Source: Pocillopora damicornis
Taxonomy: Eukaryota
DNA length: 64,000 nt
Direction: 5' to 3'
Assembly (NCBI RefSeq): GCF_003704095.1
Contig: NW_020847187.1
Location: forward strand, 62,001-126,000
The notes under the pieces are model-generated. The model did not search any database. It worked only from the letters and a program-made list of their open reading frames with translations, and was not told the DNA's origin. The position numbers and the translations under genes were made by a program. Of the stretch, positions 28,301 through 60,335 are shown one piece after another (position 1 is the first letter of the stretch; each line of letters begins with the position of its first letter).

Positions 28301-31300
28301 GTGATTGCTGGTCCACACATAGTGCTGGTTGATGAATGAAAGCTTAACAAACGTCCTCTGTTTTCTTGCACGATTTTATAAAGAAGCCAACCTTACAGAA
28401 GCTTGGATTGGACTCCATGATCGCTCAACCGAGGGCCGTTACGTTTGGGTCTCAGGATCGCAAATTCCATTCTCCGAGTGGCTGCCCGGTGAACCTGATG
28501 GAAATGAAGGACAGAGCTGTATCGTGCAAGCCAAAGGGGAATATGGACCTGGATGGGCTGACAGACAATGTTCCGATAGAAAGGCTTTTGTCTGCGAGGT
28601 TCCCGCTCCTGGTAAGAAACAATGATAATACAAAGCTTAAATCATATCTTTCAGTCATTCTCTAATCAACAAGTTACATTGGGTGTAAAGCTTTAATTGA
28701 CGTAAATGGCAATGACACTCGGTTCTTTATGGCCAAAGGACACCGATACATTTTCGTTGATCGTGGAATTATTATGTGATAACTATGGGACCTGTAAAGT
28801 CTGTCGAGACGCCGGTTATAGGATCACAACTCACGATAGCCTTAAAACAATATTCACGTTACTTAAATACATTTAACAGCATAAGTACTCATATTCAATA
28901 TACATTCATGCAAATCATGCTGATCAATTACCACAACAAAATCCTGCTCAAAGACACAACATAACAGGAATTACCAAAGAATGGGCGACCATGCTTACGT
29001 TTGCACATGTATTAGCATACAAAATATACTTATCATGATGTCAGGATGAAATCAACGACAGGTTCTTGTTTAAAGTAAGCCTGATTGATTGGTCGGCTAT
29101 TCTCTTTTGTGTTATTGTTAACTTCTCAATGCAGGTCATACCTTTTACAAGTTAACGTTTAACCTGACGGAACCACAAACACAGTCGTCCCAGTACACCT
29201 CCTATTCTCAGTACTCCCAGTCCTTTTATCCTGGGTCATATTACCCAACCGTGTGTGCACCTGTCATTCAGAATGTGAATGATATTCTCAGGGATACGGT
29301 AAGCTACTGTATGCGTAAATACTTTGTGAAAAAAGGTAGAATGAGGCGGTTATGACGTGGAATTGAATTTTTAAGGAAAAGGGTCACCTAAGGATTATGA
29401 TATACAATGGAATTGTAAAAAAAAAAAAAATGAAAGACTAAGTTGTATGCTTTTAGAAAAATTTTTAGAGAATAGAAAATCGTGACCAGTCTGTAATTGT
29501 TATGGTAATATAATTCTTAACCTGGAAAAAATCACGTTCTCCAACTCTTGAGGCCATAAAGCCACACCATCGCATCGGCTACAATTCATTCATTATTAAT
29601 TGCTCCATGTCAAGTTTTCGTTCAGGTATGCATAATGATTTTTCCTTCATAAACCCGAAGTGATTGTATTTGCACATATAGTGATCAGTTGCAAAGCAGA
29701 CTTGAGAACTTAAACAAAATAAATAACGCATGCGCAATGGTACTCTGCTCTCTTAAACCATTTGACCCCAAAGAGTCTAATTTATCCATACAATATCACC
29801 TGAATCGAACATTAAGTTCACAAGCCGAATAAAGGAAATGATCACCGACTTAAGTTCTCGATTGTTCCACAAATTCTCCTTGTCAGCACCTTAAGAAATG
29901 CAAAGAGAACAGTATGGAGAATATTCATGCTGATGTTATGGTGTACAAGGGTTAATCATCGATAATATATCAAATGATATATGGTCCTTCTCTTACTGAA
30001 GGAAATTTTGAAGGCAAATAATTAGAATTCAGGCGAAAAAACTTGGCTTTTATTTTAGAGGACTCTTTCCTCAATTCCAGTGTGAAAATAGTTAAGAAAG
30101 TTGAGATATCGTGCTCAGTATCGGCCGAACAATCTAAGGAACCGATGATTGAAGAATTGTACTCTTTTTCCCTCGCTCGTGGCAAATGTCAATCACATTC
30201 TTACTTGTCTTACTACTTAGAAGTTTAAGCCCAAGTCTCAAAATAAGAATACGAAAGCTGAAACTATTTTTGTTTTAACATTTTGTTGATTTGTTAACTC
30301 TTTGACAGATCGCTCGTTACTTCCAAGCAAAGAACCTTTCAGTTCAGCCAATTGTGAACACAATCAGGTAAATGAATCATCTACGTACTGAATAATTGAA
30401 TTATTTTTCTTTTGATTTAAGAGTTGTCTATTTTCTCCCTTTTTCTTTAGGTGCTTGCCAGACGGCAAATCAATTGTTGAGGTTATCTTGAGGTTAGGTC
30501 CGGAGGCCAGTCCTGACTCGATTGATTCACTTAAGACCAGTATTAATGAGAATGATGGAGAACTGGAACTAGAAAATGGAGTATCTGCTAAACTTATCAA
30601 TGTGACAATTCTCCTGCCAGGTAAGTAGACCATCAAGCTCTATGCAAGTGGGAAACAAACGTTTATCTTAATTGGAATGTGGTGGTATTGACTAAATTAA
30701 TTATGACGTAGAACGAAGTAATTGTGAGCATTCCAAAATTGCAGGATACTGATGGTGGATTGGTAAAATGGAACACAGCGCTCAGTTGTCTTCTTCAAGT
30801 TAACCCAACTATATCTAAACCAGCCTTTAACTTCATATTTGTATTTTGTTTTCACTCAGTTTGGGAGTATTATCATTGCATTACGCCCAAGAAACATTCA
30901 GAGCGTTTAAGGTTTAGAGCCACTTCATGACAATAATTAATTAGGCAGATGAGAAGAGGTTTGATATCCGCTGCTGGCCTTTTGCCGTAAATTATATGCT
31001 CATTTTCATTACAATAGCAAGAGAAATCCACGGTAGGCTGCAACTCCTTAATTCTCACGGTTTGCTGAGTGAGCAAGGGTCTCTTGATCAAATGTGACCT
31101 CTAATAAGACCTCGTAAAATGTTATTGTTCATTTGTGCCACAGGCGCTGACCTCGTAAAATTTTTTTGTTCATTTTTACCACAGGCGCGTCACTTTGCCC
31201 AAACCAATGTGTGAGCAGCACCTGTCAGCCAGGTTGTGACCCGACTTGCTGCGCCCAGGCTCCAGCTCCCGTAGCAGCAGTAGGAGTAGCAGCAGGAGCA

Positions 31301-31489
31301 GCAGCAGCGGGAACAGCAGCCGTTCAGTATCCATCACCAGCTTCTTACCAACCTGAACCAATCTACCCCCAAAGAAACCCATACCAGTGCCCCATTGCTT
31401 GCACCAATAATGTTAACTTCTGCCCATCTTACTGCGCGCCATATTGTTGTAACAAAAGACGATCGCGAGTAAGAATACATAAGTTTTAA
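16995..31489 (+). CDS. Gene B: secreted NOWA-like multidomain protein SP-pro(RERR)-PLAT-LamG-EGF-Thr/Ser/Gly mucin-CAP-CTLD-SEA-CRD-CRD-basic tail (~1177 aa, 22 coding exons)
   Basis: Exons: 16995-17046, 17813-17866; 18528-18672, 19088-19190, 20199-20313 (PLAT); 20453-20568, 21117-21207, 21698-21976, 22357-22575 (LamG); 23150-23191; 23322-23432 (EGF CEPNPCLNGGTC..YRCIC..YAGVKCE); 23580-23612, 23962-24489, 25581-25649 (mucin-like); 26160-26609 (CAP); 26765-26788; 27718-27894, 28384-28611 (CTLD); 29135-29298, 30309-30367, 30451-30620 (SEA-like); 31185-31489 (two CRDs). The total of 3534 nt is divisible by 3 with no internal stops. Confidence 0.85.
19310..19478 (-). repeat. Short dispersed repeat with a minimal hammerhead motif (copy 2)
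   Basis: Minus strand GCT-CTGACGA-AGGGC-taat-GCTC-GAAA-CTTC-AGC at 19443-19477. Confidence 0.7.
19530..19950 (+). mobile_element. 3' remnant of a restriction-like-endonuclease (REL) non-LTR retrotransposon in an intron of gene B
   Basis: Degenerate translation VSLFEMSCRGIGNR*VKAVEKTTRYGPLEW...IIDVQRSYSREVSRAL...MQKSIL resembles the E(L/M)SCP..N...K..KY..L motif of REL endonucleases. Confidence 0.55.
24055..24395 (+). repeat. Coding tandem repeat in the mucin-like exon of gene B (GGTTRKAGTTAK[PS]TSG unit, 4 copies, spacing 120/84/84 nt)
   Basis: Recurrent ggaggaaccac[at]cgcaaa[ag]cagg near 24058, 24178, 24262 and 24346. Confidence 0.85.
24712..24910. mobile_element. ~200-bp MITE-like element
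   Basis: Terminal inverted repeats ttaacccctttaact ... agtgaaagggtcaa with TTAA-like ends. Confidence 0.55.
25320..25368. repeat. (TA)n microsatellite
   Basis: Directly visible. Confidence 0.95.
26160..26609 (+). CDS. Gene B CAP/SCP (GAPR-1-like) domain exon
   Basis: VNVFRNLH, LNQLASEWAENLA, WYSAIRFFDW, FTQLVWQSTTSIGVGIA, ENVLP. Confidence 0.9.
26935..27433. mobile_element. Dispersed repeat, solo-LTR-like (copy 2)
   Basis: Diverged homolog of 1582-2041 in the same orientation. Confidence 0.6.
27718..28611 (+). CDS. Gene B C-type lectin domain (2 exons)
   Basis: CPEGY..SCF..TWDDA...C...GTLAS; WIGLHDRSTEGRYVW; WLPGEPD; SC..WADRQC..AFVCE. Confidence 0.92.
29752..29955. mobile_element. ~200-bp MITE-like element related to 24712-24910
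   Basis: ttaaaccatttgacccc ... gtgtacaagggttaa termini; internal caaattctcc and aataaag blocks shared with 24712-24910. Confidence 0.5.
31185..31489 (+). CDS. Gene B terminal exon with two minicollagen-type cysteine-rich domains and a basic end
   Basis: CPNQCVSSTCQPGCDPTCC and CPIACTNNVNFCPSYCAPYCC followed by NKRRSRVRIHKF*. Confidence 0.85.
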
Positions 31490-39400: not shown

Positions 39401-41945
39401 GGGTTGACGCCGGTAAACCAGAGGTTAGCATTTCAATTATTTCTGCTTTCAATTTTTAAGTTCAAAGAAATCTTCACACGAATGTCAGGGAAAAAGAAAG
39501 GTGGATTCAGAAAAGTTAAAGTTAAAGGTGTCAGGTGAGTCAATATCCTGTCTTTCGCTTACTCTGTGTTCCTTATTTGTATCACTGAGTGACAAGTCTG
39601 ATTTTAACTGCAAAAAAATAATTTACATGTATGTTGCTGTCTTGTTCTGAATTTTCTTTCTTCCTCTCACTTTAGGGCAATATCCTTCAAGGGAAGGTAA
39701 GTTCGTGTTTATATTGTAAATAAATTACAAATGTACCCACTTACATGGATTAAGTTTTGTCTGTCCCTTTTCCTTTCATGGATCACTGATTTTATGCGTT
39801 GGCTGTCGTAAATTAAAAACTGCACGACTCGATGTAAAAATTTATAGCATTTGCAGTGCAAGGTACTTCTGTACTAATCATGATACCAATTAATTATGGA
39901 TGAAAATATTATCCAGTAAAATGTTTCAATTATCTCCCATCAGACCTGCAGGCTTAGGAATTACGGTTTCAATCAAGTTTAGATCCTTCACCCCAGACCC
40001 CACTCTCCGGTTTCAGAAATTTCTGCGTCCTTCGGAAAAACTTCTTAGTATGACCATTGACAGACCAGGTGAGACTTGATTACAAAAAGAAATCACTCCA
40101 GTTTGAATAAGTTCTATTATTTCATTGTTGTTATCACTATTAGTAGTGTCACTATTGTGAATATTATCAATAGAGTTATGAATGAGAATTCTCAATTTGA
40201 TGTTCAGGGCAAAATGCAAATTTCTATGTCCTTCTTTTCGACATCATTTCAGTAATTATTCTTTTAATATCATAATTTTTCTTTGCTCATTAGATTACTT
40301 TATTTAACTGTCAATAGGCCATTGTTGTGGACACTTTTTGCGCAACCAAAATTTACTGTTTTCCTCTCTCACTTTGCAGACAAAGCGGAAGGACATACAG
40401 GTAATATAATCTCATAATTGCTGAAAAGCATTAAAAATGCACCGATTCTCACCTTTTTTATTGTCTTTTTTGACAAGTCACGTATCTTTCCTTAAGTGTA
40501 ATCAGTTAGACTTGGAAGCCATGATCACAGCGTTCCTGAAAATCGAACACAGTGTGCTTTGGTTATAGATACAATTTCTTTTCACGCTGAACACTTTACA
40601 ATTCGAATGTCTTGTTTTGATATTCCGTTTTTTTTAAGGCAAAGCAGGAGACTACTGTTATGGTTCGTGTAATAACCATGGAAGATGCACTTCCTCCCTT
40701 CACCCTTATAATTATCACCTTGGGCTCCCTGCACCGGCATACTCTGTGTACTACCCAGGGGTGCAGACCGTGACGGGCACCACTGACCCATACCCTGCCA
40801 GCTGTCCAATGACATGCAGTCAGTATCCAACATTAGACTGCTACATGCAGTGCAACGACGAATGTTGTGATAGCAGGGAAGGCAAAAGGAATTGGAAGGC
40901 GAAGGCCATCGAAGATCTAATGGAGAAGCGATTCCAAAATCAGGATCAACTTACTAGTGATGAAAGAAATCACACAAAGTTTGGATCTAGTTATTCAGAG
41001 GACAAAGATTCAGATTTGCAGCATAACAATGCTGAGTCACATGATAAAGGGGATGTTTCAAAAAATGTTATCAAGAGTCTCAAGAAAAAGATAAAAAGTC
41101 TTCAAAGGCTCTTGAAGAAAAAATATCAACCGGATAAGTTCGATTATTTCGACGACATTAACGATTCTACTGAACCAAAAGATGACCATGTTATCAATTC
41201 TCTCAACAAAAAGGAACAGTCACATGATAATGATGAGGAAAACGAACTAGACGCAATTGCACACGATCTCATTGATGATAAAAATGAGCCAAGAGGCGTG
41301 CCTGTAGGCAACACACTCAATAGGCCCGAGCTAGCAGAGAAAAATATCACAAACAAGGAAATCACGTACAATCATGAAGAGAGCTTTGGTCAAAAGGAAA
41401 AGTCCAAGGGCAGTCTACAAGACGACGATGGCAATGAAGACATCAGCCTTGAAAATCAAGGCGAAAAAATTGGCATTCAAGGGGACGGCACAGGCAATCC
41501 AGGTGACAGCATTGAAACAAAAGAAAATAGAACTGGACAGCATGATAGTAAAAGTGGCTTTACCAAAACTTATAAAACATCACATCTCGAATATCAAAAC
41601 GATTACATGGTGAAAGAAAGAGAAAATGCCGTGAAAACGATTCAACACGCAAATATCTCAGTTGAAGAAGAACCTATTAACAAAGGGAAGACAGCCAAGC
41701 AACACGACCCCATTAATGTCTACGAACCTGGAAATAGAATGATTGAGGAGAGCACTGATGAGGAAGGAGAAGGTGACGATTCTGAAAACGAACCACCAGC
41801 TGAACAAGGACTTTTGAGTTTGCAAGATTCTGCATTAGACCCAACTGAAGAAATATTGAATGAAGAGGGAATTGATGATGTTGGTAACTTTGGCAGGAAG
41901 AGAAACTTTATTCACAGGACAAAGTCAAGCCACTCTGATAAATAA
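36403..41945 (+). CDS. Gene D: secreted NOWA-like protein SP-CAP-CTLD-SEA-half CRD-CRD-GKR-acidic tail (~854 aa, 11 coding exons)
   Basis: Exons: 36403-36460 (MKLLFFCLLSTSLVCTSVK); 36663-37088 (CAP); 37476-37499; 37615-37809, 38220-38420 (CTLD); 39044-39156, 39461-39534, 39676-39696, 39944-40068 (SEA, e.g. WRANYKDKNSKAYRDLVNGI); 40380-40400; 40639-41945 (CRD CPMTCSQYPTLDCYMQCNDECC plus a ~350-aa D/E/N/K-rich tail). Total 2565 nt, in frame. Confidence 0.83.
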
Positions 41946-47320: not shown

Positions 47321-50300
47321 ATGAAGTCACTTCAATATTTATTGGAATTTCTTTTGCCGGTAGCTGTTGCTGTGCTGTTTCTTAAAGGGCGATGTGCACA
47401 TGGTAAGTCATAGCTCCAGGTACTTTGATTCCGGGAACAGCTTCGATCTTCATGATTACCGTCCCAGCTGGGCGTAACACGTTACAGAATCGGTATTATT
47501 CTTGGAGAGAATGAACCCTTGAAGAGGAGTTGTAACTATGGGCTCTCTTAAGCCATTAAAAAGATGAGGGGGGGGGAGGGGGGAGAGAACTCTACGATTG
47601 GAATGAAATACAAAAGATATTTCAATGAGCTGCATGATAGTGTTGTTCCATGCACCTTAAAGACATCGAGTTCCCTGATCACTGGCAATGATTCCCACAC
47701 GTAAAAAGGCCTATAATGGTTAAGAAACTAATGTAAGCTATGTGTGAAAATTTTTCTTTAACCTGCAATAAAAAATGAGCTTTATTTATTGTAAAACTGG
47801 TCCATGTTTGCAGGTGCAGTATGCAGACGTCCAGTTGACATCGCCTTTGCAATTGATGCCTCGGGTAGTGTGGGATCATGGGGATATGATCAAGAGAAGA
47901 AATTTGTACAAAATACCGTGGCAATATTTGGAATATCTCGCTCTGGAACGCATGCTGCAGTAATAGTGTACAGCACAAGGGCTGAGGTTACAATATCATT
48001 TCCTCAACATAACCACTTCTGGAGTTTCTCCAGAGCAGTTTCCAAACTTCCTTATCCCGGTGGGTATACCAGAATTGACCTGGCACTGAAAAAGGCAGCA
48101 GAGGAGGTGTTTTCTATTGACGGTGGAACACGGAGTAGTGTACCTAAGATACTGATTGTAATGACGGACGGTTATCAGACACGTACCTCAGATTCTATCC
48201 CTCTTGACAAAGCGGTTCTACCCTTGAGAGCCAAAGGAGTTCAGGTTTATGCTTTGGCCATCGGGCAGTACGTGAGGGATTACGAGTTGAGGTTGCTTGT
48301 TGAAAAACCAGCACACATCTTCCGATCCAGTAGGTTTAGCAGTCTCAGCAGTGTTATATCGAAATTGGCAACAACAACTTGTACCAATGGTGAGTGTGTA
48401 ATGAAGTTTTTCAAAAAAGAAAAAACAACAGATCTGAAATTCCCTGTTAATTAATAACATTTTTCTCAAAGTCTCATGCCTCTGGAAACGAGGTCGGTAT
48501 AGGTAAGATGCCTTTCAGTAACTAGTCACTGATTAGCACTTCCACCCTCCAAAGCTCAGAGAAAGGAAATACATTTTTCCTCACACTATGCCTTACCTAC
48601 AATCCGTGTCAAAATTAGGGGACACATCATGTTTGAAGAGTTTTATTTATCTGTGGAAAAACACTCCTGTTTGTACCACACCCTAAATCATTGTCAAGAC
48701 CCCCCTCCCCTATTCAGTGTTGCCTGTATGTAGCTAAACGTTCATGGAATCACGATACGACATCGTTTTGGGAAGAAGAGGAAGAATAAGTTAACTCAAC
48801 AAGGGGAATTGGAAAGGTCAATGTGTCAGCAATTTTGACGCCTATAGTAGGGTAAAGGCAAGGTGTATACTCGTGCCAAGTGGCGCATCCAGCCGGAGTC
48901 TATGCCAGTTTCCTTGGCACAAAGCTACCAGGAGTAATACTTCTCCCTCCTGGATGGGATGCCATTCCATCGCAAGATTACCCCCAGCATTTCATCGAGT
49001 TTCCCTGACAATTCGCCGCTACCCATTTATACTCCAGTCGCATCCAGCCCGAGTCTATGCCAGTTTCCATGGCATAAAGCTACCAGTAGTAATGTTACTC
49101 CCTCCTGGATGGGATGCCATTCCGTTGCAAGATTATCTCCAGCATTTTATCAGGCTTCCCTGACAATTCGCCGCTACTAATTTATACTCCTGGGCGAAGA
49201 AAGGCACAGTGAGGGTAAAGCGTCCTATCCAGGAGTTCCACTTAATTTCTCGAACCATAATCCTCCGCCGGCCAATCACCAGGATTCCCATTATTGCTCG
49301 TGCTCTAGTCTCAATCGATAGTGTGATCGTGATCTCAAGACAGTATCTAAAAAAGTTCAAATTCAGCATGCCTTTTATTGAACACTGACTGATGTAATTT
49401 TTTGCAGCCCTACCTACGGCGTTCGGAATTTATCCACTTAACCAGCAAACCCGTGGAAAGGACATAAGCGCACGTAAGGCTCCTAAAGGTTACTTAAGTT
49501 CAGTAAACATCGTCTCTGGACCCTACGGGAGAGCTGGTGGAGCATTTTACCTCAAGGGAACATCCGACAGCTACATTGACTTCCCAAACAGCGCTCGTGG
49601 CAAATTGGACGCGTACAGTTCTATCTCAATATTTTTGTGGGTTTTCCCTGAAGGCACATCTGGTCCTATCATCAACTACCGAAGAGGAGGATATGGCGTC
49701 GGCCTTTGGATGACACGCTCCAAACTACTCGTGGGTCTTATTTACAGCCGCCGCAACTTTTACAGAAGAAAAATTTATTTTTACAATTTTTATCCAAAGA
49801 GGTGGTATTATGTTGGACTTACGTACGATTACAACCACGGAATTGCAAGTTTGTGGGTCAATGGCAAAATGGTGAGATGAGTTATATTTAAGAAAGCTGA
49901 GATGATCAGTAAGCCATAATGGGAGGTTTAACAATAACTTGGGCATTCAAAGTCAAGACTTCACCTAGAATAAGTAATACAGCACATGGTTTGAATCCGT
50001 AGGTAACATGTGATAATGTGGTGTGCACTTCCGGGTAAGTGTAGACCTGAGGAGGATTGTTGTCAGTTATGACTGACGTTTCGACATCCTGAGCTGAGGT
50101 CATCATCAGAGTCAAGTAAATAGTTGTTGTCATTCGAATGTACTGGGTCTGTTTCGTGTAAATTTATTGGTTAGATTAACCGTAAAGCTATTGGCTGTAA
50201 GACTTACGTGGCGTAAGGCGGTCGTGATCGGTAAGTTTCGATCCATCTATAAAGTTTGGTCGTTCTGGTCATGTGTGATTTTAATGTTAATATATTAGTT

Positions 50301-53300
50301 GATATGTAGGTTACAAACACCAGCTACGGCCCTAAAGCGAGTTGATGTCCGTTTGCTGTTAAAAAGATTTATTTGTTATTTTTCTTTTAGGCTTCTCACT
50401 TAAGGATTGGACGTATACACTTAGCTACACAATATCCCATTCGTATGGGTGCCATGAGCGACCCAAAGCAGTACTTTAGAGGCAGGGTCACTTGTCTGCA
50501 GATTTATGGAATTGCACTGACTGCCAACCAGATACAATCTGTAAAGACGAAATGTGCCGCCGGCGACAGTAAGTGATTTGATGTAATTCAGAAATATTTG
50601 GCTAGTAATTTGCCTTTTTTGACTTAAACTATGCTTAATAACTCAATATTTCAGAGAAAGATCCTTGTCTTGCCAGTCCTTGCAAAAATGGAGGGAGCTG
50701 CATTGTGGACACGAAAGATAACACCGGCTATCGATGTCGCTGCAAACCAGGGTACCGTGGACATCGATGTGACGGTAACAATTATTCGCTTGAATGTCTT
50801 TATTTTAATTTAATTCAATTTGATTTAGAACCAAGCTCAGGGGAAACGATGGCGTTTTCTTTTCACATAATCCCAAATAAAATTGATCATTGTCCATTTG
50901 AAATGTCAACACGAACATTTCCCTGAATGGAAAGAGAGAGAAAAAAATTTATTTGAGTTCAGAGGACCACCAACAGGTAATTTTAACTGTTGAATTATCA
51001 ATTGGTGAAATTATTTAGTTGCTTCCATGTGTTATCGACCGCAAACAGTTAAAGTGATACATAGAGAAGATGCATCAAGCGATAACTGCGAGATGTTAGA
51101 TTCACCTTTTTGAAGGCGGACCCAAGAATATCAAGCAGAACTTTACCGTTCACATCCTAATCATCATTATCGCCGTTATTATCATCATCGTATCATGTCT
51201 GCAGTTTCACGGTTCGTTTCGATCATCTTCCACTTTGGCCTTTGACTTCCTTTATTTGCAACTGCTTACAGAAAAACCAACACAATCAACTGGAAAGCCA
51301 ACAGCAAGACCAACTGGAAAGCGAACAACAGCAGCAAAAGGTAATCACAAAAATGTGGATCACGATAGCAACATAAAATTCTAAGTGGTGTAGATGACGC
51401 TTCGTACACTTATACTTTGGCAAATACTCGCAAGTATGTTGTTAGCAGCGAGCCTGAGATCCCTTTTCTAGAGACTGGTCCCTATAAAGTCATACTTCGA
51501 TAGCTTAATAAAAGGAATGAAAGTCTAGGTCTTGGCTTAAAGGTCATTCTCTTCTGTTTTGGGTTCGGATATTTTTATGGTATAAACTTCAAAACGAAAA
51601 TTATTTCGACCCCGAATGTTAGCACAGCATACCATAAAAATAAAGCATTCCGTGTCAGGCAAAGACGCCCTTGTCATTTGTGCATGTTTCTAAATGATAG
51701 GGACTGATGCAAAGAGGTACTTTCCTTTGCCTAATTGTATCCCTTCTCTAACATCACTAAGGATCACCGGGCCGAAAAATTCCAAAAACACCAGGACAGA
51801 CCACCAAGCCCGCCAGCACTGGAGGAGTAACCACCCCTGGAGCTATCACAAATATAAGTAAGTTTCCGGAACCATAGCAAGATTTTTCAAAACTGTTCAA
51901 GACAGTCATAATCTGTGCTTAACGCTTATTGACTGAAATGTATTAATAATGTCGAAGTAAAATATGTTATTGGTATGGTATTTCAAAGTAAGAAATTCGC
52001 ACACCGTAAATCTGAGGTCAGAAAATAGGGTGAAATTGCTCTGCTCCTTGATAGCAGCGAGTTATCTGAAAATAGAGTCCGTCATCTTTCTCACGTGAGT
52101 AGAACCTCACGACATTTTACTCTCACGAATCGTGGGTTACACATTTTGAAAATCGTCATGATCCAAACTTACTCTTACAGATGGTTTCCGTATAGAGGTG
52201 GTGGAGTTTATCAATCGATTGAGACGCCTGCATGGTGCAGGTCCTCTTATTATTTCCACTCGTATTTCTACGGCAGCCCAAAACTGGGCTCAAGTCTTGG
52301 TCTCCAAAGGCACAGCCTCCATAGATCCGAACACGAATTACGGCACGAATGTGTTCACCAAGGTTGGTTCTCAAACTGGTTTGGCCCAGTTGGCTGTGGT
52401 GACATGGTACACATCAGTGAAGCATTATGACTGGGCCAGGCGCCAGCCAAAAATTCTGGCACTGCCTTTTATTCATCTTGTATGGCTCTCAAGTAACTTT
52501 GTTGGTGTCGGATTGGCCAGGTCGCCATCTGCAAAGTTTTACATTGTTGTGTACTTTGACCCAATGCCTGGAAATAAACAGCCGTTGCTTAAAGAAAACG
52601 TTCTACCATATACAGGTATGCGACACAGAAAGAAATAATACTCACTTAACTGTCTAAACTATAGCGCGAGGTAATGATACAGGTTCTTAGTCCGGCGTTA
52701 AATACTTCAAAAGCAATTTTTTTCCGAAATTCAGAAAGGGAAATGTAGTAAAGAATGACTGTAAATTGCTCCGAATAGGAATATTCGTTACTGCTTTGGT
52801 TGTACCACGCACTTTTTCACCAATTCAAAGATTAGCAAGTTAGAATAAGAGGCAGAAAACGGAGATGTTGGATAAATTAAATGTTAACTTGGTATTTCAA
52901 ATCTTTATTCCTAGATGTATACATCCTATTGCAGAGTGGTAAGTAAATTATTGTCTCCTTTTCGTTTGTGATGCTCCCGCTCAAAAATTTGATTTAAGTT
53001 TTATTTTCTCAATAAATAAAAGACCCTACAATGCTCAGGGCTCGGGGATTAAAATCGAGAAGCTTTTTTTGTGTGTTTATAGCCAAAATGCAGGTTACAT
53101 CTCAGGGGCTATTCATTTCGTTAATCAATACCAAAGAAGTAATTATTCTACCACCTATTGCTCACTGCAGTAAAATCATCAAGGTGTTTCTGTGCAATAC
53201 TACGTATTGTAACTCTGTCAATCTCATTCAATAGCACTGTGTACCAAGGGATATACGCTACACAAAGGAACTTGTTACAGATATCATACGGATAAACAAA

Positions 53301-56300
53301 CTTGGGAGGGAGCATTGTTTCAGAGCGCCAAAGATAACGCTACCTTGGTATCCTTCCACCAGACATACGAGGTTGGCTTTGTCCAAAGGCTTATTACACC
53401 AGGAATAACAGGTTTAGTGTGGACAGGCTTGAATGATCGGATCACGGAGGGGACGTATACGTGGTCGGACGGTACCAGTGTTGATCACACTTCTTGGAAA
53501 GCAAACGAACCAACGGGTTTAAAGGAAGACTGTGTTGGTATAGAAGGGACTAGCTATGGCACCCTGATGTCTGATGCTCCATGTACTGAGCCACATAGTT
53601 ACGTGTCTAGAAAGCCACTTGAAGGTGAGGAATTGCCTCTTTATCTTACTTTTCAGAGACTTTTTGAGAGAACACCGATGGATTATATATCACGCCACTG
53701 CACGTTTGACCCAGAAAGCTCTAGCTAGAGCAGCACTATAGATCCTTAAAACATCACAGAGTCGCAGTCCACAACTCAGGTTTACTGAACATTACCTTCT
53801 TAGTGTAACAAAATGTGCGTACAACCCAAAACCAGGACGCATTTGAGATCTGTAGAAGGAACTAACTTTTAAACTGAAGTACAGATTTAAGACTGGTTCC
53901 TCACCTGCACATTCTAAAACACTACTTTTAGGACTAATTACATATCGAATGAAGATACAACTTACTTCTTTACTGTGGACGGATGACTACGGCCAAGCGA
54001 CGTCTTTCCCGTATTTGGACCTCAAGCAAAAGATAGAAACAATGGTAGGTTTTTGAGCTGTAAGTTAATCAATGTGTTATGGGTCAGTTGAAAACATAAA
54101 GAAAAATAGCCAAGTACAGCCGTTTCCATGTTATTGCGTACCATAAATTTGAGGATTTAACTACAAGGCACCCACACTGTGATTTTTACAAAGGCTACAG
54201 CTCTTCCCACGTCTCAATACACTTCCAAATAGTATCTAAGATATCAAACAGTTTTCGCATGTAGTATCGCATCTATAAACCACCTTAGAGTGGTCGTTTA
54301 TACAAATAACAAACTGAAGATGACCTCATCAGTTGATAATGGCCCTATTAATGCTTTTTTGCTATTATTGATTTCCTTCCCTAATTTTAGCTGCTGGAAA
54401 TCTTTAAGATTGATCCGACCTTCGTGTCAGGATATGTCGAAGATTTCAGGTAAATGCATGTATACTTTGCTGAGAAGACTTTAATCAGTGATCAGTTAAT
54501 TTCCTCTTTAACAAAACTTTTGGTGATGAAATGTTCGTATCTTTTTTCCATCTGATCATTAGCTTTTTCCCACAGCAAAACACCTAAGCTAATTTCTCAA
54601 CCTACTGCTAAGCCAACAAAGCCTGGTATTGCGACTCCTGCCAAGTCATCAGGGACATCTCCAGTCTCTGGAGCCACCAGACCAACACTGGTTTCCACAG
54701 GAACCACACAGGCCACTCCAGCGTCAAAACCTACTTCAGGTGGAGCAATTTCCAAGTAAGGAGTCGACATTAAAATTGTAATGATTTGTGGTTTATCGTC
54801 TCTCGCGGAAACAGGCCTTACTTAACAAACGAGGGGGCTACAATATCTTATGACCACAAAAAAAATAGTAAAAAAAAACTTCACGACCCAAATGTATGAA
54901 ACATTTTTCATCTTCTCTTTCGTTTCTCGGAAAAAAATCGATATAAACTCTTTTTTTTCTATCTGCTAGTGAGAAGTCGTCGGTGACAAGTTCAATTATT
55001 TTGAAGTTTGGACCAGGAGTAAAACCTGATCCTACAAAGCCATTTCAAAATCATTTGAGGAGGAACCTTGGAAGACTTCCAGGTCCGGTCAATCTGAAAA
55101 CTCTTATCCAATCCGTCAGAATAGTTCACCCAGGTAAGTTTTTACATAAATATGTGAAAGTGAACGAAAGTATACCATGGTTTTAAGGTAGACGCTAAAT
55201 AGACCTCCACAACCTACTTCAACCTTTTCCAATGTTATATTATGTATTTTTTCATTTATCTCAGGAGTTCCACCAGCTGTGTTGGGAACTTGTACACCCG
55301 CCTGCTATACCACTTGCCTCGTCTCTTGTAATCCATTTTGTTGCAATTCCAAAATGGCTGCTGGAAGCAATATACAGTACTCTGCCATGCGACACGCTGT
55401 AATAACCCAAGCAAATCGCAGGCGATTTATTATGCCTGGCTTTTCGGGGTATCCAATGGCTCCCCTCCAGACCATGGTACCGCAGGCCCGTGCGATGACA
55501 GTTCCAGTGACCCTGGCAATAAGATGTGTTCCAACCGTTCAGGCACCTTGCCCACCAGGCACTCAAGTTTCACAAACTGTTCAGGGCTCTTATAAAATGC
55601 CTCAACCTCGAACTATTCAAGGAATCTTGAGCCCAAAGCGACGTCCGATCGTGTCGATCCCACGCTTGACATTGTCAAGGCTTCCTTATTCAACCAATCA
55701 GCAGGCATTTCTCCCAAGGGTCGCCAATCCAGTGCAGATACCTTGTATACCAAGTCTTTATAACCTATGTCCACCATTAATACGTCCCCCTACAAAGCCT
55801 CTGAAAGTGACAGATCCTCCACAGCACATAATACATCTTCCACCGCCTCAGATGCAGCCACCGTGCACTCCTGGCGCATTCAATCCTTGTCCACCACAAA
55901 CAGGTCTTCCTTCAAGTCCTTTAAAATTAACAGATCCTCCTCAACACATAATACATCTTCCTCCGCCACAGTTACAGCCACCCTGTATTCCGAGTGCGTT
56001 CAATCCCTGTCCACCACAAATAAGTCCTCCTTTGAGACCTGTGAAAGTAACTGATCCTCCGCAGCATGTGGTTCATTTACCTCCACCACAGATACAACCT
56101 CCTTGTATTCCTAGTGCGTACAACCCATGTCCCCAGCCAATTATACCCCCTGTGAATCCTGCACTTGCACAATCCCCACCACAACAAATGAATCGTCTGC
56201 TACCACCACAGATGCAACCTCCCTGCATTCCATCTTTATACAATCGTTGTCCACCTCAGACGAATACTCCACCTTCCAAATTAAAAGTTATAGATCCTCC

Positions 56301-57696
56301 GCAACATGTGATACATTTGCCACCACCCCAGATGCAACCCCCTTGTATTCCTAGTGCGTACAATCCATGTCCTCAACCCATTAGGCCCCCTATAAAACCT
56401 GCACTGGCCACGTACCCACCACAACAATTTATGCGGCTGGTACCACCACAGGCGCAGACTCCTTGTATTCCTAGTGCGTACAATCCATGTCCCCAACCAA
56501 TTACGCCCCCTATTATGCCTGCACAGGCCAAATACCCATCACCACTTTTATGGCCTGTGCTTTGCATTCCTCTTCCTAACCGCCCTTGTCCTCCAAGAAA
56601 GCTTTCGAAACCATCACACAAGAAGGGCAAGTCTCGAGCTTTCATGCCCAAACCCGTTGTGAGTTCCTATGTGGTCCCGTATAGCAACTTACCATACTGG
56701 CAATCTCGGGTGGCATCCTATACTCCATTTGTCGCACCGCCATTTCCAGTCTACCCAATACGGCGATTTCCAACCTATGCAACCCAAAATTATGGCCAAA
56801 AACCACCATTTCAGCGGTATCGCTCCCCTGCCTTGTCTCAGGTGTCGCCAATACAGCCGTTTGGATTGCCTCCTTGGGGTCCAATGCCTTTCCCCTATTT
56901 CAGCCGAGTTACCAAACCTTCTCTCGGTGACAAACCTAAAAAGACTTTGCCTGAGCCTCCAAAGCCCTCTCAGGCTCCTCAACCGCCTAAGCCTATTCCA
57001 GTCAAAGGACCAATTTCTTTACAAGGTTCTTTAACTCTTTATCCTAAGCCAGCACCAATAGCTCCTCCTTTTCCTTTCCCTCCGTATCCCCCAGGACAAA
57101 ATCCCTTCTCAATGATCAACCCCTGCATCCCTTCTCTAGCGAATCCCTGTAATCAAAATACAGGAAATGTACCTTCAATACCTCCTACGAATTCGTACGA
57201 CAGAAAATCTAGGCCTATACTTTTAACACGACCTCTGCAGGTTCAAGGGAGCATTTATCTCAAACCACCTCCACCACGCCCATTCCCTATACCGCCGAGT
57301 TATACATCAAGTGTTATGAATCCTTTTTCCAGGCTCGTTTCTCCCAAACCACCAAATGCACCTCAGATAGCTGCGTCCCCCCATTCAATAATTGTTCAGC
57401 TTCCCGAAATTTCTCTTCAGACTGCTCCAGCATCTTTACTTCCAAAGCCTATCGTTCCACCTCCACCACCTTCACCAGTCTTTCCAAGTAGCTGTCCAAT
57501 ATCCTGTACTCACTATCCAGGAGTATTTTGCCCTTCATATTGCGCGAAATATTGTTGTAAAAAGAGAGGTAGGAAACAGAAGAGTCCCTCGAAGACGAAA
57601 AGTAAGAAGCCTGATAAAAATAAGATGCAAAAAGAGGCCAAGGCAAAAAGCAAAGAGAAAAAAATTTTGAAAGTGAAAAAAGCTAAGAAGGGATAA
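47321..57696 (+). CDS. Gene E: secreted NOWA-like protein SP-VWA-LamG-EGF-mucin-CAP-CTLD-SEA(split)-CRD-Pro-rich repeats-CRD-Lys-rich tail (~1793 aa, 15 coding exons)
   Basis: Exons: 47321-47402 (SP); 47814-48389 (VWA); 49408-49871, 50391-50568 (LamG); 50655-50774 (EGF); 51272-51340, 51762-51857 (T/K/P linker); 52181-52615 (CAP); 52915-52938; 53235-53624 (CTLD); 53932-54044, 54391-54449, 54576-54755, 54970-55133 (SEA with insert); 55265-57696. Total 5382 nt, in frame. Confidence 0.87.
47814..48389 (+). CDS. Gene E von Willebrand factor A domain exon with intact MIDAS
   Basis: [14 protein letters not shown] (DxSxS), [25 protein letters not shown]. Confidence 0.93.
48850..49240. repeat. SINE-like repeat with an internal 155-bp tandem duplication in gene E intron 2
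   Basis: 48884-49035 and 49039-49190 are near-identical direct repeats. Confidence 0.75.
50070..50114 (-). ncRNA. Minimal type I hammerhead ribozyme motif within a Penelope-derived short repeat (~50005-50120)
   Basis: Minus strand TGACT-CTGATGA-TGAC..GTC-GAAA-C-GTC-AGTCA: perfect 5-bp stem I, intact core boxes and a GUC cleavage triplet. Confidence 0.7.
55741..56590 (+). repeat. Coding 120-bp (40-aa) tandem repeat, 7 copies plus a degenerate one, in the gene E terminal exon
   Basis: cc[ctg]tg[ct]a..cc.....c.ta/tc aa.cc.tgtcc recurs at 55741, 55861, 55981, 56101, 56221, 56341 and 56461; unit approx [36 protein letters not shown]. Confidence 0.95.
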
Positions 57697-58461
57697 GTCT
57701 AAATTTCACATGATTTTGTTAGCCAAGCTAATTCAAAAAGTTTTGTTCGCTTTTCACCGGAGCAGCTGTACTCTTTTGTGCGTTGAGCGATTATAATTCT
57801 CTGATATTTGTAGTCCTTAACGGATATAAGACAGTTTGGTTCCGTCCTCTTACACTCAAATACAATGTCATAGGGCAATTTGTAAAGGTAAAAACATAAT
57901 TTCTAATGCAATGTGGTTTTGATAAGCACAAGTGAGTTTTGCACTAGCAATACGGGCTCGTACTTATTTACACCAAATTGCTCGAAAAATCATGTTATTG
58001 CTTATTAGTAATTTGCCAAAAGGTCTGGAGAGCAGCAGATATGTAACGAATTTAAGAAAGTGAACGACACTGTCGAAACATGTTTTTAAAAAAGTGTCGT
58101 TTATTTCCTTAAATTCGTTATTCGTAATTTAGAAGAAAAAAGCATCCCAGAAGGTCAAGATAGACAAAATTTGACGGCGCGCACTCGCTATTTGAAGTTT
58201 ATACTCGTGCTACAACTTTGCTACATAAGAAATTAACTCGTTTTCAGCCAGTCAGAAGCGCGTAGTTTTTTCATGTTTATCATTACATTAATTTATGTAT
58301 ATTTCACAGACCTCACAAGAAACACTTACAGCTGGAATCGAAAATATTTTCTTGTAATTTTAATTTTAGTTTCGTAGAAAAGGTTGTGGTTATTCATCGT
58401 GATGAATAACAATAAAAGCTAAGCATGGCTCTCCTGTTGTTGTGTTTTTTTATCGTGGGCA

Positions 58462-58561
58462 NNNNNNNNNNNNNNNNNNNNNNNNNNNNNNNNNNNNNNN
58501 NNNNNNNNNNNNNNNNNNNNNNNNNNNNNNNNNNNNNNNNNNNNNNNNNNNNNNNNNNNNN
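58462..58561. other. Assembly gap (100 N)
   Basis: Run of N. Confidence 1.
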
Positions 58562-60335
58562 CCCTCGGTAGTAACAAAACAACTCATATCTTTTTTTTCT
58601 TTTAGGGATGTTTTTAGATAACTTTCTGGTGTTTGTTTCTTTAACAAATAGTTATGTTGTTTGATGAGAAATCATATGCAAGCAATGTATAACTGTAAGT
58701 TCAAAGCGCTTCGATCTTTAAGGTGTAATTGGAATAAAATCATGCAATCCAGAGATTTATTGCTCATATTGTTTTCGCTTTTAATTCATCCACCAATCGA
58801 ACAAAATCCAACGCAATGCTAGATAAGAAACCGAAAGGTCCTTGGTAACCATATTTTAAATCAATATTACAATGACAGACCAAGACTTTCCTGCGCGAAA
58901 GTTGCCGATTCATTTCAATTGTACTTTAAGACCCTGATCTGACATTCCCTAGAGGATCTGAAAAAAGTGCATTTGTGCCATGGATTGATGCTATTACTCA
59001 TGATTTTCCGCTTTGGCCAAATATAAACACAGGCATTCGGAAAATTTGCGCGTACTATATGTGCATATGGTTGTTTCCTGGTCAGGTAATCAAATTCTGT
59101 TTGATTACGTCTGTTAGGCTAGGAAATTAAATCACAAATGTAAAAGGAGATCAGACAGTAAAATAAAAAAGTTCAATGATGGCTAGTCAAACGGTCTGTA
59201 TTTTTAATTTATACAAATGACCTCATAAAGTGTACGTAATTTTTGCTCAGCACTGTAAGGTTTTTTTTTGAAGGAGAGATAGTGAGACGCTTACAACTAA
59301 CCTTGTTTTTTCAAAGTAACAGGAAATCTGGGAAGTTCCTAGGAATAAATCTACAAAGCAACTCGTTCAATTCAGTTGAGGCAGTTTTAGTTTCTGGTTA
59401 AGGAGTTATGAAATAACATTCAAACAACCTGTTAGACTTCTTTCATCCACTGTTGAGATAACGAAAACAATCGCTAGTTTTCATTTAAAGCTTGAGCAAG
59501 CCAACTCATAAAATCGTGACTTCTTTATTCTGATATAAAAACAATCACCAGCCTTTTTTTAAGACCCGTGAACGCCGACTAGAGAAATAAATCTCTGTAC
59601 GTTTTAAGAGACATCTTTAAGAAAAACTCCATCAATTTTAATGACATGAAAAACGAAAGTTTGCTCCGATTTCCGTCTGGCACCTCTGTGATTGTAAATA
59701 AGCTTGTGACGTAACTGCTGTGATATTTAACCGTAAAAATATATTTTTAATTTCTATTTTGCACTTTGTGCACCAATTTCATGTAGTTCTTTAAAGAGAA
59801 ATAGATTACAGCTGGAGCGATTTAAGTCCGTATCGCCATTTCCCTCAAACGTTCTTCTATCAATGCTCTTAACTGCAACCTACTACTTTAGTTGTCTCAT
59901 CCTTTTTCAGTGTAACCTGCTCCATAAGCTTCAATGTTTAAATAAAATTACATAAAAACAACGAAATCTCGCCATTTCTGTTGGTCAGTCAACTCAAAAC
60001 ACAATGTGACTTATGACTGAAAATATTCAAAAGTTAGGGGATTGAGTCACCGTAACTAGACATCGGAAGTAGTTGTAAGTGAGCCATGTCTGGAGGGTTC
60101 TAGCAAAGACCAGAGGACTTCTTTTATTTGGCTCCGGAAACTATTTTATATCTGACATCCAGGTAGGGAATTTAGAACGTTAAATGATAATAATGGTGAA
60201 AACTGTATTTGCATCTTAGTAAGATGAACGTCTGGTATTTGTACCATAAATTGGGTTTGTCAGAGCATCCTTATGAAATTTGTTTTTGGAGAATCCTTGT
60301 AACATATCGGAAAAAGCGTAAAAATAACACATTAC

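What the first reader, a model, noticed from the sequence alone, without database searches (positions are those of the whole stretch)
55265..57696. CRD-bracketed Pro-rich polymer built from C-x7-C mini-loops and HxxH motifs
Seen: a single 2.4-kb exon has a canonical CRD ([18 protein letters not shown]) and a terminal CRD. Between them lie about 10 copies of a C-x7-C motif (e.g. [11 protein letters not shown]), seven at an exact 40-aa period. Linkers alternate between a His type ([13 protein letters not shown], 4 copies) and a non-His type ([13 protein letters not shown]). There is no Gly-X-Y collagen. Established: minicollagens, cnidoin and cnidarian proline-rich proteins use terminal CRDs around a mechanical middle segment. 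Inference: this is a new mechanical segment of polyproline-II rods punctuated by redox-switchable disulfide loops and potential metal-binding His pairs. It is of biomaterials interest.
Basis: partly seen in the sequence, partly recalled or inferred. Interest (0 to 1): 0.78.

Follow-up and report, generated by a model that had tools for sequence, protein, structure and literature searches.

The report
Cysteine-loop proline spacer in coral NOWA-like gene
The 2.4-kb stretch is the expressed last exon of a large coral stinging-capsule (NOWA-like) protein gene; between two cysteine-knot anchors it encodes a proline-rich, strongly positively charged spacer with ten conserved two-cysteine loops, a design I did not find described, though its function is inferred, not shown.

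Summary
Exon 55265-57696 (+) is one open frame of 809 codons. It has a canonical N-terminal CRD, a variant C-terminal CRD, ten C-x7-C pairs (seven at an exact 40-aa period), four HxxH blocks, 24% Pro and no Gly-X-Y.

It is not a stand-alone CRD-bracketed polymer. PolyA RNA contigs from four runs splice it, through seven GT..AG introns, to upstream CAP/SCP, C-type lectin and SEA exons. Homology to a 1691-aa Montipora "uncharacterized protein" extends the gene to VWA, Laminin-G and EGF exons. The gene is one of at least four tandem NOWA-like paralogues. They share the CRD-X-CRD-basic-tail terminal cassette but differ in X.

The family is small: 8 clusters among 1.84 billion representatives, and no member carries a functional name. 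Across 25 relatives, 404 of 409 non-CRD cysteines lie in x7 pairs, and loops are gained or lost as pairs. The His blocks are conserved in most members but absent from the two most distant ones.

AlphaFold finds no fold (mean pLDDT 38.6). The spacer has K+R 62 against D+E 8.

Best reading: a covalently anchored, extended polycationic tether and cross-linker of the cnidocyst polymer. PPII structure, redox switching and metal binding remain untested. I class it as a new variant of a known kind.

The parts
55265..57696 (+). 3'-terminal coding exon (809 codons plus TAA): CRD, Pro-rich spacer, CRD, Lys-rich tail
   Evidence: ORF. Acceptor AG at 55263-55264 and joint 55133>55265 in RNA contigs of 4 runs. 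Open frame.
55291..55344 (+). N-terminal canonical minicollagen-type CRD (CX3CX3CX3CX3CC)
   Evidence: Regex match. The three best PDB matches are Hydra NOWA CRD entries, the best being 2hm3 at E=0.059, followed lower down by minicollagen CRDs.
55501..55599 (+). Conserved beta-hairpin-like element carrying the first C-x7-C loop (aa 79-111)
   Evidence: The only part of the AF2 model with pLDDT 60-70, strands 78-85 and 103-110. Many invariant columns.
55744..56583 (+). Seven tandem 40-aa units, each a C-x7-C loop plus linker. Four linkers carry D-x3-H-x2-H-L-P-P, three do not.
   Evidence: Units share 43-78% nt identity with many synonymous differences.
56563..56589 (+). Ninth C-x7-C loop (aa 433-441), invariant across the family
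56596..56655 (+). Near-invariant basic motif ([20 protein letters not shown])
   Evidence: Invariant K445 S447 P449 K453 K455 S456 R457 M460 P463. Coordinates.
56656..57003 (+). Aromatic/Pro-rich region (Tyr/Phe/Trp with Pro), no Cys
   Evidence: Conserved Y468, Y485, F488, Y518.
57004..57051 (+). Conserved strand-like motif [16 protein letters not shown]
57124..57150 (+). Tenth C-x7-C loop (aa 620-628)
57211..57270 (+). Conserved motif [20 protein letters not shown]
   Evidence: Nearly invariant columns 650-664. Coordinates.
57379..57420 (+). Conserved motif [14 protein letters not shown]
57493..57558 (+). C-terminal variant CRD (C-x3-C-x7-C-x3-C-x3-CC), shared with the paralogues at 31388-31450 and 40803-40868
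   Evidence: All six Cys invariant. No PDB sequence match.
57559..57693 (+). Lys-rich tail, 45 aa, 23 K+R against 3 D+E, ending in the conserved ILKVKKxKKG
52181..52615 (+). Upstream exon of the same mRNA: CAP/SCP domain
   Evidence: Pfam CAP 5e-13. RNA joints.
52915..52938 (+). 24-nt micro-exon between CAP and CTLD
   Evidence: RNA joints in 4 runs. AG/GT sites.
53235..53624 (+). Exon: C-type lectin domain
   Evidence: Pfam Lectin_C 1.6e-10. RNA joints.
53932..54044 (+). Exon: N-terminal part of SEA domain
   Evidence: Pfam SEA E=6.7e-4 on the exon alone. SEA 3.8e-7 in the Montipora relative. RNA joints.
54391..54449 (+). 59-nt exon (SEA, middle)
   Evidence: RNA joints.
54576..54755 (+). Thr/Pro/Ser-rich mucin-like cassette exon (60 aa)
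   Evidence: Included in the contigs of all 4 runs. Translation.
54970..55133 (+). Exon: C-terminal part of SEA region, directly before the terminal exon
   Evidence: RNA joints. tblastn to P0020 aa 756-809, 74% identity.
47804..50773 (+). Probable 5' part of the same gene: VWA (47804-48454), Laminin_G_3 (49407-49874, 50394-50573), EGF (50654-50773)
   Evidence: Pfam. Collinear tblastn to P0020. RNA contig X1 runs 1574 nt 5' of 52181.

Best explanation
The stretch is the last coding exon of a large secreted coral gene of the NOWA (nematocyst outer wall antigen) type. The domain order is VWA, Laminin-G, EGF, mucin linker, CAP/SCP, C-type lectin, SEA, then this exon.

The exon encodes a cross-linking cassette of CRD, spacer, CRD and Lys-rich tail. 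By analogy with minicollagens, NOWA, cnidoin and CPP-1, the two CRDs would tie the protein covalently into the disulfide-linked cnidocyst wall or tubule polymer by disulfide exchange.

The 716-aa spacer is non-globular, 24% proline and strongly cationic (net about +54, plus about +20 in the tail). It most likely acts as an extended, semi-stiff tether. The tether would hold the N-terminal lectin and adhesion domains away from the anchor and bind the organelle's polyanions (poly-gamma-glutamate, chondroitin).

Its ten C-x7-C pairs most likely form local nine-residue disulfide loops that staple the chain at regular 40-aa intervals. They may also serve as extra exchange points.

The D-x3-H-x2-H blocks are a lineage-specific addition and could give pH- or metal-dependent association.

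Shown: transcription, splicing, frame, domain order, motif statistics, conservation and lack of a predicted fold. Inferred: cnidocyst location, disulfide pairing, PPII conformation, polyanion binding and any His function.
For: Expression and gene structure:
- Seven GT..AG joints in polyA RNA contigs of 4 runs from 2 studies link the exon to the CAP, CTLD and SEA exons.
- The spliced frame is open over 1264 codons with only the terminal stop.
- Pfam finds CAP, Lectin_C, VWA, EGF, LamG3 and SEA on the exons. The Montipora relative P0020 has the same order.

Link to the NOWA type:
- The three best PDB matches of the N-CRD are Hydra NOWA CRD entries.
- The C-CRD variant is shared with two neighbouring paralogues.

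Loops and conservation:
- 10 of 10 possible Cys pairs are at x7, against a shuffle mean of 0.53.
- 404 of 409 non-CRD Cys in 25 relatives are in x7 pairs. Loop number varies from 5 to 17 in the near-full-length members, always as pairs, and the 5 exceptions sit at truncated ORF ends.
- The Cys, the basic motif and the strand-like motifs are invariant at 31-63% overall identity.

Physical character:
- AF2 mean pLDDT is 38.6, with only a hairpin around the first loop at about 67.
- K+R 62 against D+E 8 in the spacer; the tail has 23 against 3.

Literature:
- CRDs polymerise by disulfide reshuffling (PMC4863159).
- CPP-1 is CRD-polyproline-CRD, and its N-CRD peptide, as printed there, has a five-residue second loop (my count) (PMC6910907).
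- Hydra NOWA is a cysteine-linked tube component thought to bind chondroitin through its lectin domain (PMC10014300).
- Nematostella has four NOWAs used differently by cnidocyte types (PMC12549020).
Against: - There is no direct evidence that this gene is expressed in cnidocytes or that its product is in capsules. The RNA comes from whole-holobiont libraries.
- Only two CRDs are present, against eight in tandem in Hydra NOWA.
- VWA, LamG, EGF and SEA are also typical of ordinary extracellular matrix proteins.
- AlphaFold's low confidence shows no fold, not a PPII rod.
- The longest Pro run is 5, so there is no continuous polyproline as in CPP-1.
- Disulfide pairing within a loop, as opposed to between chains, cannot be told from sequence.
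- The link to the VWA-LamG-EGF exons rests on collinearity and contig length, not on laid reads.
Confidence: 0.68

Rival explanations
1. One reading: the middle is a dedicated mechanical element. Polyproline-II rods would be punctuated by redox-switchable disulfide loops, and His pairs would bind metal (Zn/Cu) to harden or tune the material.
For: - H-phi-phi-H-L-P-P is nearly invariant where present (H187, H190, H270, H347, H350).
- Of 60 blocks in 14 relatives, 55 keep both His, and 44 of those also keep an Asp four residues upstream.
- In 4 of the 5 blocks that lost a His, the Asp is lost too. This hints at a D/H/H triad.
- In this genome the exact block occurs four times in this exon. It occurs only three times elsewhere, against one match for the reversed-pattern control.
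Against: - The two most distant members (P0019, P0024) have loops, CRDs and the basic motif but no His block.
- The window's own copy has replaced the His in three of seven units.
- The blocks counted are related by descent, so the Asp/His co-loss is not a statistical proof.
- No metal or redox data exist, and the papers I searched describe no metal cross-linking in cnidocyst walls.
Confidence: 0.22
2. The C-x7-C cysteines are not closed loops. They are distributed inter-chain cross-link points, which would make the spacer a multivalent covalent cross-linker of the minicollagen network along its whole length.
For: - CRD cysteines are known to switch from intra- to intermolecular bonds (PMC4863159).
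- 20 extra Cys at regular spacing would raise the cross-link density.
- Both Cys of every pair are conserved.
Against: Strict pairing at one fixed spacing, and gain or loss always as pairs, is what an intra-loop partner predicts. Independent cross-link points need no fixed partner distance. AF2 places the first loop at the turn of a hairpin.
Confidence: 0.25
3. The protein is not a cnidocyst component. It would be an ordinary extracellular matrix, mucus or skeletal-organic-matrix protein that happens to carry CRD-like cysteine motifs.
For: VWA, Laminin-G, EGF, SEA and mucin-like linkers are common in matrix and mucus proteins. There are no cell-type data.
Against: - The canonical six-Cys CRD pattern is present, with its three best PDB matches to Hydra NOWA CRD entries.
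- The CAP plus CTLD pair is followed by CRDs, as in NOWA.
- The gene lies in a tandem cluster of such genes. Two Nematostella NOWA genes likewise have close gene numbers (NV2.10388 and NV2.10392).
- It ends in a basic tail.
Confidence: 0.1

Closest known systems
NOWA (nematocyst outer wall antigen) of Hydra and the NOWA paralogues of Nematostella
   Same: A CAP/SCP domain is followed by a C-type lectin domain and C-terminal minicollagen-type CRDs. The three best PDB matches of the N-CRD are Hydra NOWA CRD entries. The paralogues lie in tandem in this window, and two Nematostella NOWA genes have close gene numbers.
   Different: Hydra NOWA has eight CRDs in tandem and no long spacer. Here two CRDs are separated by 716 aa of Pro-rich, loop-studded sequence. 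This gene also has VWA, Laminin-G and EGF before the CAP domain and SEA after the lectin domain.
CPP-1 (cnidarian proline-rich protein 1) of Hydra
   Same: A CRD, proline-rich middle, CRD layout without collagen. One CRD has a lengthened second loop: x5 in the CPP-1 N-CRD peptide printed in PMC6910907 (my count), x7 here.
   Different: CPP-1 is a small (26 kDa) stand-alone protein with a continuous polyproline stretch. Here the cassette is the tail of a ~1,800-aa multidomain protein, the longest Pro run is 5, and the middle has internal cysteine loops, His blocks and a strong positive charge.
Minicollagens and cnidoin
   Same: Terminal CRDs flank a mechanical middle segment, and the protein is integrated by disulfide exchange (PMC4863159, PMC4321713).
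   Different: There are no Gly-X-Y triplets, and the sequence as read shows no Gly/Gln-rich silk-like elastomer. Minicollagens and cnidoin are not described with internal C-x7-C loops.
Plant hydroxyproline-rich cell-wall proteins and vertebrate small proline-rich (SPRR) envelope proteins (functional analogy only, from general knowledge)
   Same: Short tandem Pro-rich units, basic charge, an extended non-globular chain, and covalent cross-linking into an insoluble wall.
   Different: They are unrelated in sequence and lineage, and they are cross-linked through Tyr or transglutaminase rather than CRDs. No homology is claimed.

Membership tests
NOWA family | CAP/SCP domain in the same polypeptide, N-terminal to the lectin domain | tested here: met
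   Pfam CAP E=5e-13 on exon 52181-52615. The exon is spliced into the same RNA contigs and the frame is continuous.
NOWA family | C-type lectin domain | tested here: met
   Pfam Lectin_C E=1.6e-10 on exon 53235-53624. RNA joints.
NOWA family | C-terminal minicollagen-type CRD(s) | tested here: met
   Canonical CX3CX3CX3CX3CC at 55291-55344. The three best PDB matches are Hydra NOWA CRD entries, best 2hm3 at E=0.059.
NOWA family | Eightfold tandem CRD array, as in Hydra NOWA | tested here: not met
   Only two CRDs, 716 aa apart, and the second is a variant. I therefore file it as NOWA-like, not as a NOWA orthologue.
NOWA family | Sequence orthology of the CAP and CTLD domains to Hydra or Nematostella NOWA | not tested
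NOWA family | Location in the cnidocyst (tube or wall) and release only by reduction | not testable with these tools
   This needs antibody, proteomic or single-cell data.
Minicollagen | Central Gly-X-Y collagen triple-helix stretch (about 12-16 triplets) | tested here: not met
   No run of three or more G-x-y.
Minicollagen | N- and C-terminal CRDs with the CX3CX3CX3CX3CC pattern | tested here: inconclusive
   The N-terminal CRD is canonical. The C-terminal one has x7 in the second loop.
CPP-1 | Small stand-alone protein with a continuous polyproline stretch between two CRDs | tested here: not met
   The exon is spliced to at least 7 upstream coding exons. The longest Pro run is 5.

The most novel reading that the evidence does not exclude
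The 40-aa unit (a nine-residue C-x7-C disulfide loop plus a D-x3-H-x2-H strand set in proline) would be a new kind of reversible cross-link module for the cnidocyst polymer. It would combine local redox-exchangeable staples with pH- or metal-gated strand association on a polycationic PPII chain. That would let a NOWA-type protein switch between a condensed storage granule and a dispersed, wall- or tube-bound state during capsule maturation. The module would be confined to a subset of stony corals.
Probability: 0.2. Interest if true: 0.7.

Novelty: new variant of a known kind. Interest (0 to 1): 0.45.

Why it matters
Cnidocyst walls resist about 150 bar. They are built from a few protein types that share CRD anchors but differ in the middle: collagen, silk-like or polyproline. 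This exon adds a fourth kind of middle, a long, cationic, proline-rich chain stapled at regular intervals by two-cysteine loops. It sits on a lectin-bearing NOWA-type protein rather than on a small wall polymer.

If the inferred properties hold, this would show how anthozoans vary capsule or tubule chemistry by swapping the segment between two fixed anchors within a tandem gene cluster. It would also offer a compact 40-aa unit for protein-material design. The value is moderate, because the general principle is already known and the function here is inferred.

Tried and rejected
- Pfam on the exon gave 0 families.
- The ESM Atlas feature search gave no usable hit and holds no model.
- A PDB sequence search with the C-terminal CRD gave no match even at E<=10.
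- AlphaFold2 with the 12-sequence alignment gave mean pLDDT 38.6, so I made no fold search on the model.
- Three word-based protein searches found only unnamed ORF-level relatives plus one NCBI "uncharacterized protein".
- The profile search of 1.84 billion representatives found only 8 clusters. No match at E<=0.001 lay outside this small family, and the library gives neither names nor taxa.
The taxa of the unnamed relatives could therefore not be named.
- The exon is single-copy in this assembly.
- I considered that the C-x7-C loop is a half-CRD that lost its middle Cys (C-x3-C-x3-C turned into C-x7-C). The window's own N-CRD start resembles unit 2, but the relatives' N-CRDs do not, and the strings are too short to test. 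I did not pursue it.
- Candidate convertase-like basic sites inside the exon (KRR, RRR) are not conserved in relatives. I rejected them as processing sites.
- I sent no complex-prediction job, because the report does not claim a specific binding pair.
- I did not send the joined (spliced) protein model to any search or fold tool. Exons were searched one by one by reference, and the join was made only inside a script to check the reading frame.
- The masked N run 3' of the gene (about 58400-58580) was left alone.
Full report
**The observation**

The window holds a single open frame from the splice acceptor at 55265 to TAA at 57694-57696. The listed ORF runs 55279-57696 and is 805 aa. Residues below are numbered from 55267.

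- A canonical six-cysteine CRD lies at aa 9-26.
- A second CRD lies at aa 743-764. Its second loop has seven residues instead of three.
- Between them are exactly ten C-x7-C pairs, with first Cys at 87, 160, 200, 240, 280, 320, 360, 400, 433 and 620.
- The seven pairs from 160 to 400 are spaced exactly 40 aa apart. This matches the 120-nt tandem array that TRF reports at 55767-56542.
- All 20 cysteines outside the CRDs are in x7 pairs. In 20,000 shuffles of the middle segment the mean was 0.53 such pairs and never more than 5.
- HxxH occurs four times, against a shuffle mean of 0.15.
- Pro is 24%, no Gly-X-Y run exists, and the longest Pro run is 5.

One detail is wrong. The His-type and non-His linkers follow the order H, H, H, N, H, N, N', not a strict alternation. 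The units share only 43-78% nucleotide identity, with many synonymous differences, so the array is old and its motifs have been maintained.

**It is translated, but it is not a gene of its own**

I laid polyA RNA contigs of four runs from two studies (coral or marine metatranscriptomes) on 51850-57840.

- They cover the whole exon. No joint, insertion or deletion was reported inside it.
- Seven GT..AG joints connect it to these upstream exons: 52181-52615, 52915-52938, 53235-53624, 53932-54044, 54391-54449, 54576-54755 and 54970-55133.
- Joined in a script only, these exons give one open frame of 1264 codons with the stop at the very end.
- Searched exon by exon, they encode a CAP/SCP domain, a C-type lectin domain and a SEA domain. 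The SEA domain is interrupted by a Thr/Pro-rich cassette.
- One RNA contig continues 1574 nt further 5'.

A 1691-aa NCBI protein, "uncharacterized protein [Montipora foliosa]" (P0020), contains the same tail. Its Pfam order is VWA, Laminin_G_3, EGF, CAP, Lectin_C, SEA. It maps collinearly onto window exons from 48068 to 57567. The gene is therefore about 10 kb long and about 1,800 codons. Its 5' end is inferred, not read. The joined model was not sent to any search tool.

Eleven transcript variants fall in the exon. Four are synonymous and seven are missense. None touches a motif Cys or His, and none creates a stop.

**Surroundings**

The window carries at least four co-oriented genes with a CAP domain: at 26174, 36662, 52183 and 63252. 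For three of them a C-type lectin domain also lies inside the window.

Two neighbours end in related terminal exons.

- Exon 31166-31489 encodes a CRD, 45 Ala/Pro-rich residues, a CRD and a short basic tail.
- Exon 40746-41945 encodes one CRD and a long acidic tail.

The C-terminal CRD variant (CPxxC, a 6-7-residue loop, then C-x3-C-x3-CC) is shared by all three. The cluster thus keeps the anchors and varies what lies between or after them. In Nematostella, NvNOWA-2 and NvNOWA-3 have close gene numbers (NV2.10392 and NV2.10388), which suggests that they too are neighbours.

**The family**

- Word-based searches found 19 relatives of the exon at 31-63% identity. All are unnamed ORF-level predictions from metagenome or Logan assemblies.
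- A profile of 12 members, searched against 1.84 billion representatives, found only 8 clusters and nothing else at E<=0.001. The segment therefore has no detectable relative outside this small group.
- The names of the carrier taxa could not be retrieved.
- The most distant members (P0019, P0024) keep the N-CRD, the hairpin with the first loop and further C-x7-C loops. They also keep the basic motif, the strand-like motifs, the C-CRD variant and the basic tail, but they have no His block.
- The locus of P0019 also has a lectin gene piece upstream and a CAP plus lectin pair downstream.
- In another coral (P0010, P0012) a module of roughly 340 aa is present three times. It holds the loops with His blocks, the basic motif, the aromatic region and a strand motif.
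- Across 25 proteins, 404 of 409 non-CRD cysteines are in x7 pairs. The five exceptions lie at truncated ORF ends. Loop number ranges from 5 to 17 in the near-full-length members, always in whole pairs.
- Of 60 linker blocks in 14 members, 55 keep both His and 44 of these also keep an Asp four residues before the first His. In four of the five blocks that lost a His, the Asp is gone as well. This is suggestive only, because the blocks are related by descent.
- In this genome the exact H-phi-phi-H-L-P-P block occurs four times in this exon. It occurs three times elsewhere, against one match for the reversed-pattern control.
- The exon itself is single-copy in the assembly.

**Physical character**

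AlphaFold2 with the family alignment gives mean pLDDT 38.6. The only element above 60 is a hairpin at aa 78-110, with the first C-x7-C at its turn. The product is therefore non-globular. The spacer has 62 Lys+Arg against 8 Asp+Glu, and the 45-aa tail has 23 against 3. No N-glycosylation sequon is present in the exon.

**How it most likely works**

Established background:
- CRDs fold with internal disulfides and then polymerise by disulfide reshuffling (PMC4863159).
- CPP-1 and cnidoin are integrated into the Hydra capsule wall in this way and are released only by reduction (PMC6910907, PMC4321713).
- Hydra NOWA is now regarded as a cysteine-linked late tube component. Its lectin domain is thought to bind the tube's chondroitin (PMC10014300).
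- Nematostella has four NOWAs used differently by cnidocyte types (PMC12549020).

My reading, by analogy, in four inferred steps:
1. The protein is secreted into the cnidocyst vesicle, and its two CRDs fix it covalently in the polymer.
2. The proline-rich, polycationic spacer is an extended tether. It also binds the organelle's polyanions.
3. The C-x7-C pairs are closed nine-residue loops that staple the chain every 40 residues. They may also take part in disulfide exchange. A fixed partner distance and gain or loss in pairs argue for intra-loop pairing.
4. The His blocks are a later addition in part of the family. They may make association depend on pH or metal.

None of these four steps was tested here.

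**Comparison and novelty**

The gene works like a NOWA and shares its CAP, CTLD and CRD logic. It fails the eightfold CRD array of Hydra NOWA and has extra domains, so I call it NOWA-like. It fails the defining features of minicollagen (no collagen) and of CPP-1 (not small, no continuous polyproline).

Literature searches for NOWA, CPP-1, CRD proteins, His-rich cnidocyst proteins and coral NOWA found no description of a C-x7-C or His-block spacer. Coral papers mention NOWA only as an annotation.

The scan's own notes for this genome list the NOWA-like cluster (s1-785000) and the SEA cassette (s1-785069). On another contig they list a different pair of CRD proteins with His blocks in polyproline (s1-763573). 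The last is a parallel that I did not test.

**Verdict**

It is a new variant of a known kind, of moderate interest.

Noticed in passing
window 31166-31489 (+): Terminal exon of a neighbouring paralogue (CAP at 26174, CTLD at 28404): a near-canonical CRD, about 45 Ala/Pro/Gly-rich residues, a CRD of the same variant type as here, and a short basic tail. It is the short version of the cassette.
   Followed up: partly
window 40746-41945 (+): Terminal exon of another paralogue (CAP at 36662): a single variant CRD followed by a ~350-aa strongly acidic tail, opposite in charge to the exon studied.
   Followed up: no
window 54576-54755 (+): A 60-aa Thr/Pro/Ser-rich cassette exon lies between the exons that encode the two halves of the SEA domain. 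It is included in the RNA contigs of all four runs and is absent from the Montipora relative P0020.
   Followed up: partly
window 52915-52938 (+): A 24-nt micro-exon between the CAP and C-type lectin exons, supported by GT..AG joints in all four RNA runs.
   Followed up: yes
P0010 and P0012 (1270 and 1273 aa; relatives from another coral assembly): A module of roughly 340 aa (three loops with His blocks, a loop with the basic motif, the aromatic/Pro region and a strand motif) is repeated three times in one open frame. The spacer can therefore grow by large as well as small duplications.
   Followed up: partly
window 23945-24645 (both strands): Long overlapping ORFs on both strands in a repetitive Pro/Val/Ala-rich stretch, just downstream of an EGF-like match at 23324-23437. 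It may be a linker exon of the first paralogue. The frame was not determined.
   Followed up: no
window about 58400-58580: A run of N (masked or gap) just beyond the point where the longest RNA contig should end (about 58386, reckoned from contig length).
   Followed up: no
window 5051-5842 (-): A Laminin_G_3/pentraxin-like domain ORF on the opposite strand, belonging to another gene (Pfam E=5.7e-24).
   Followed up: no
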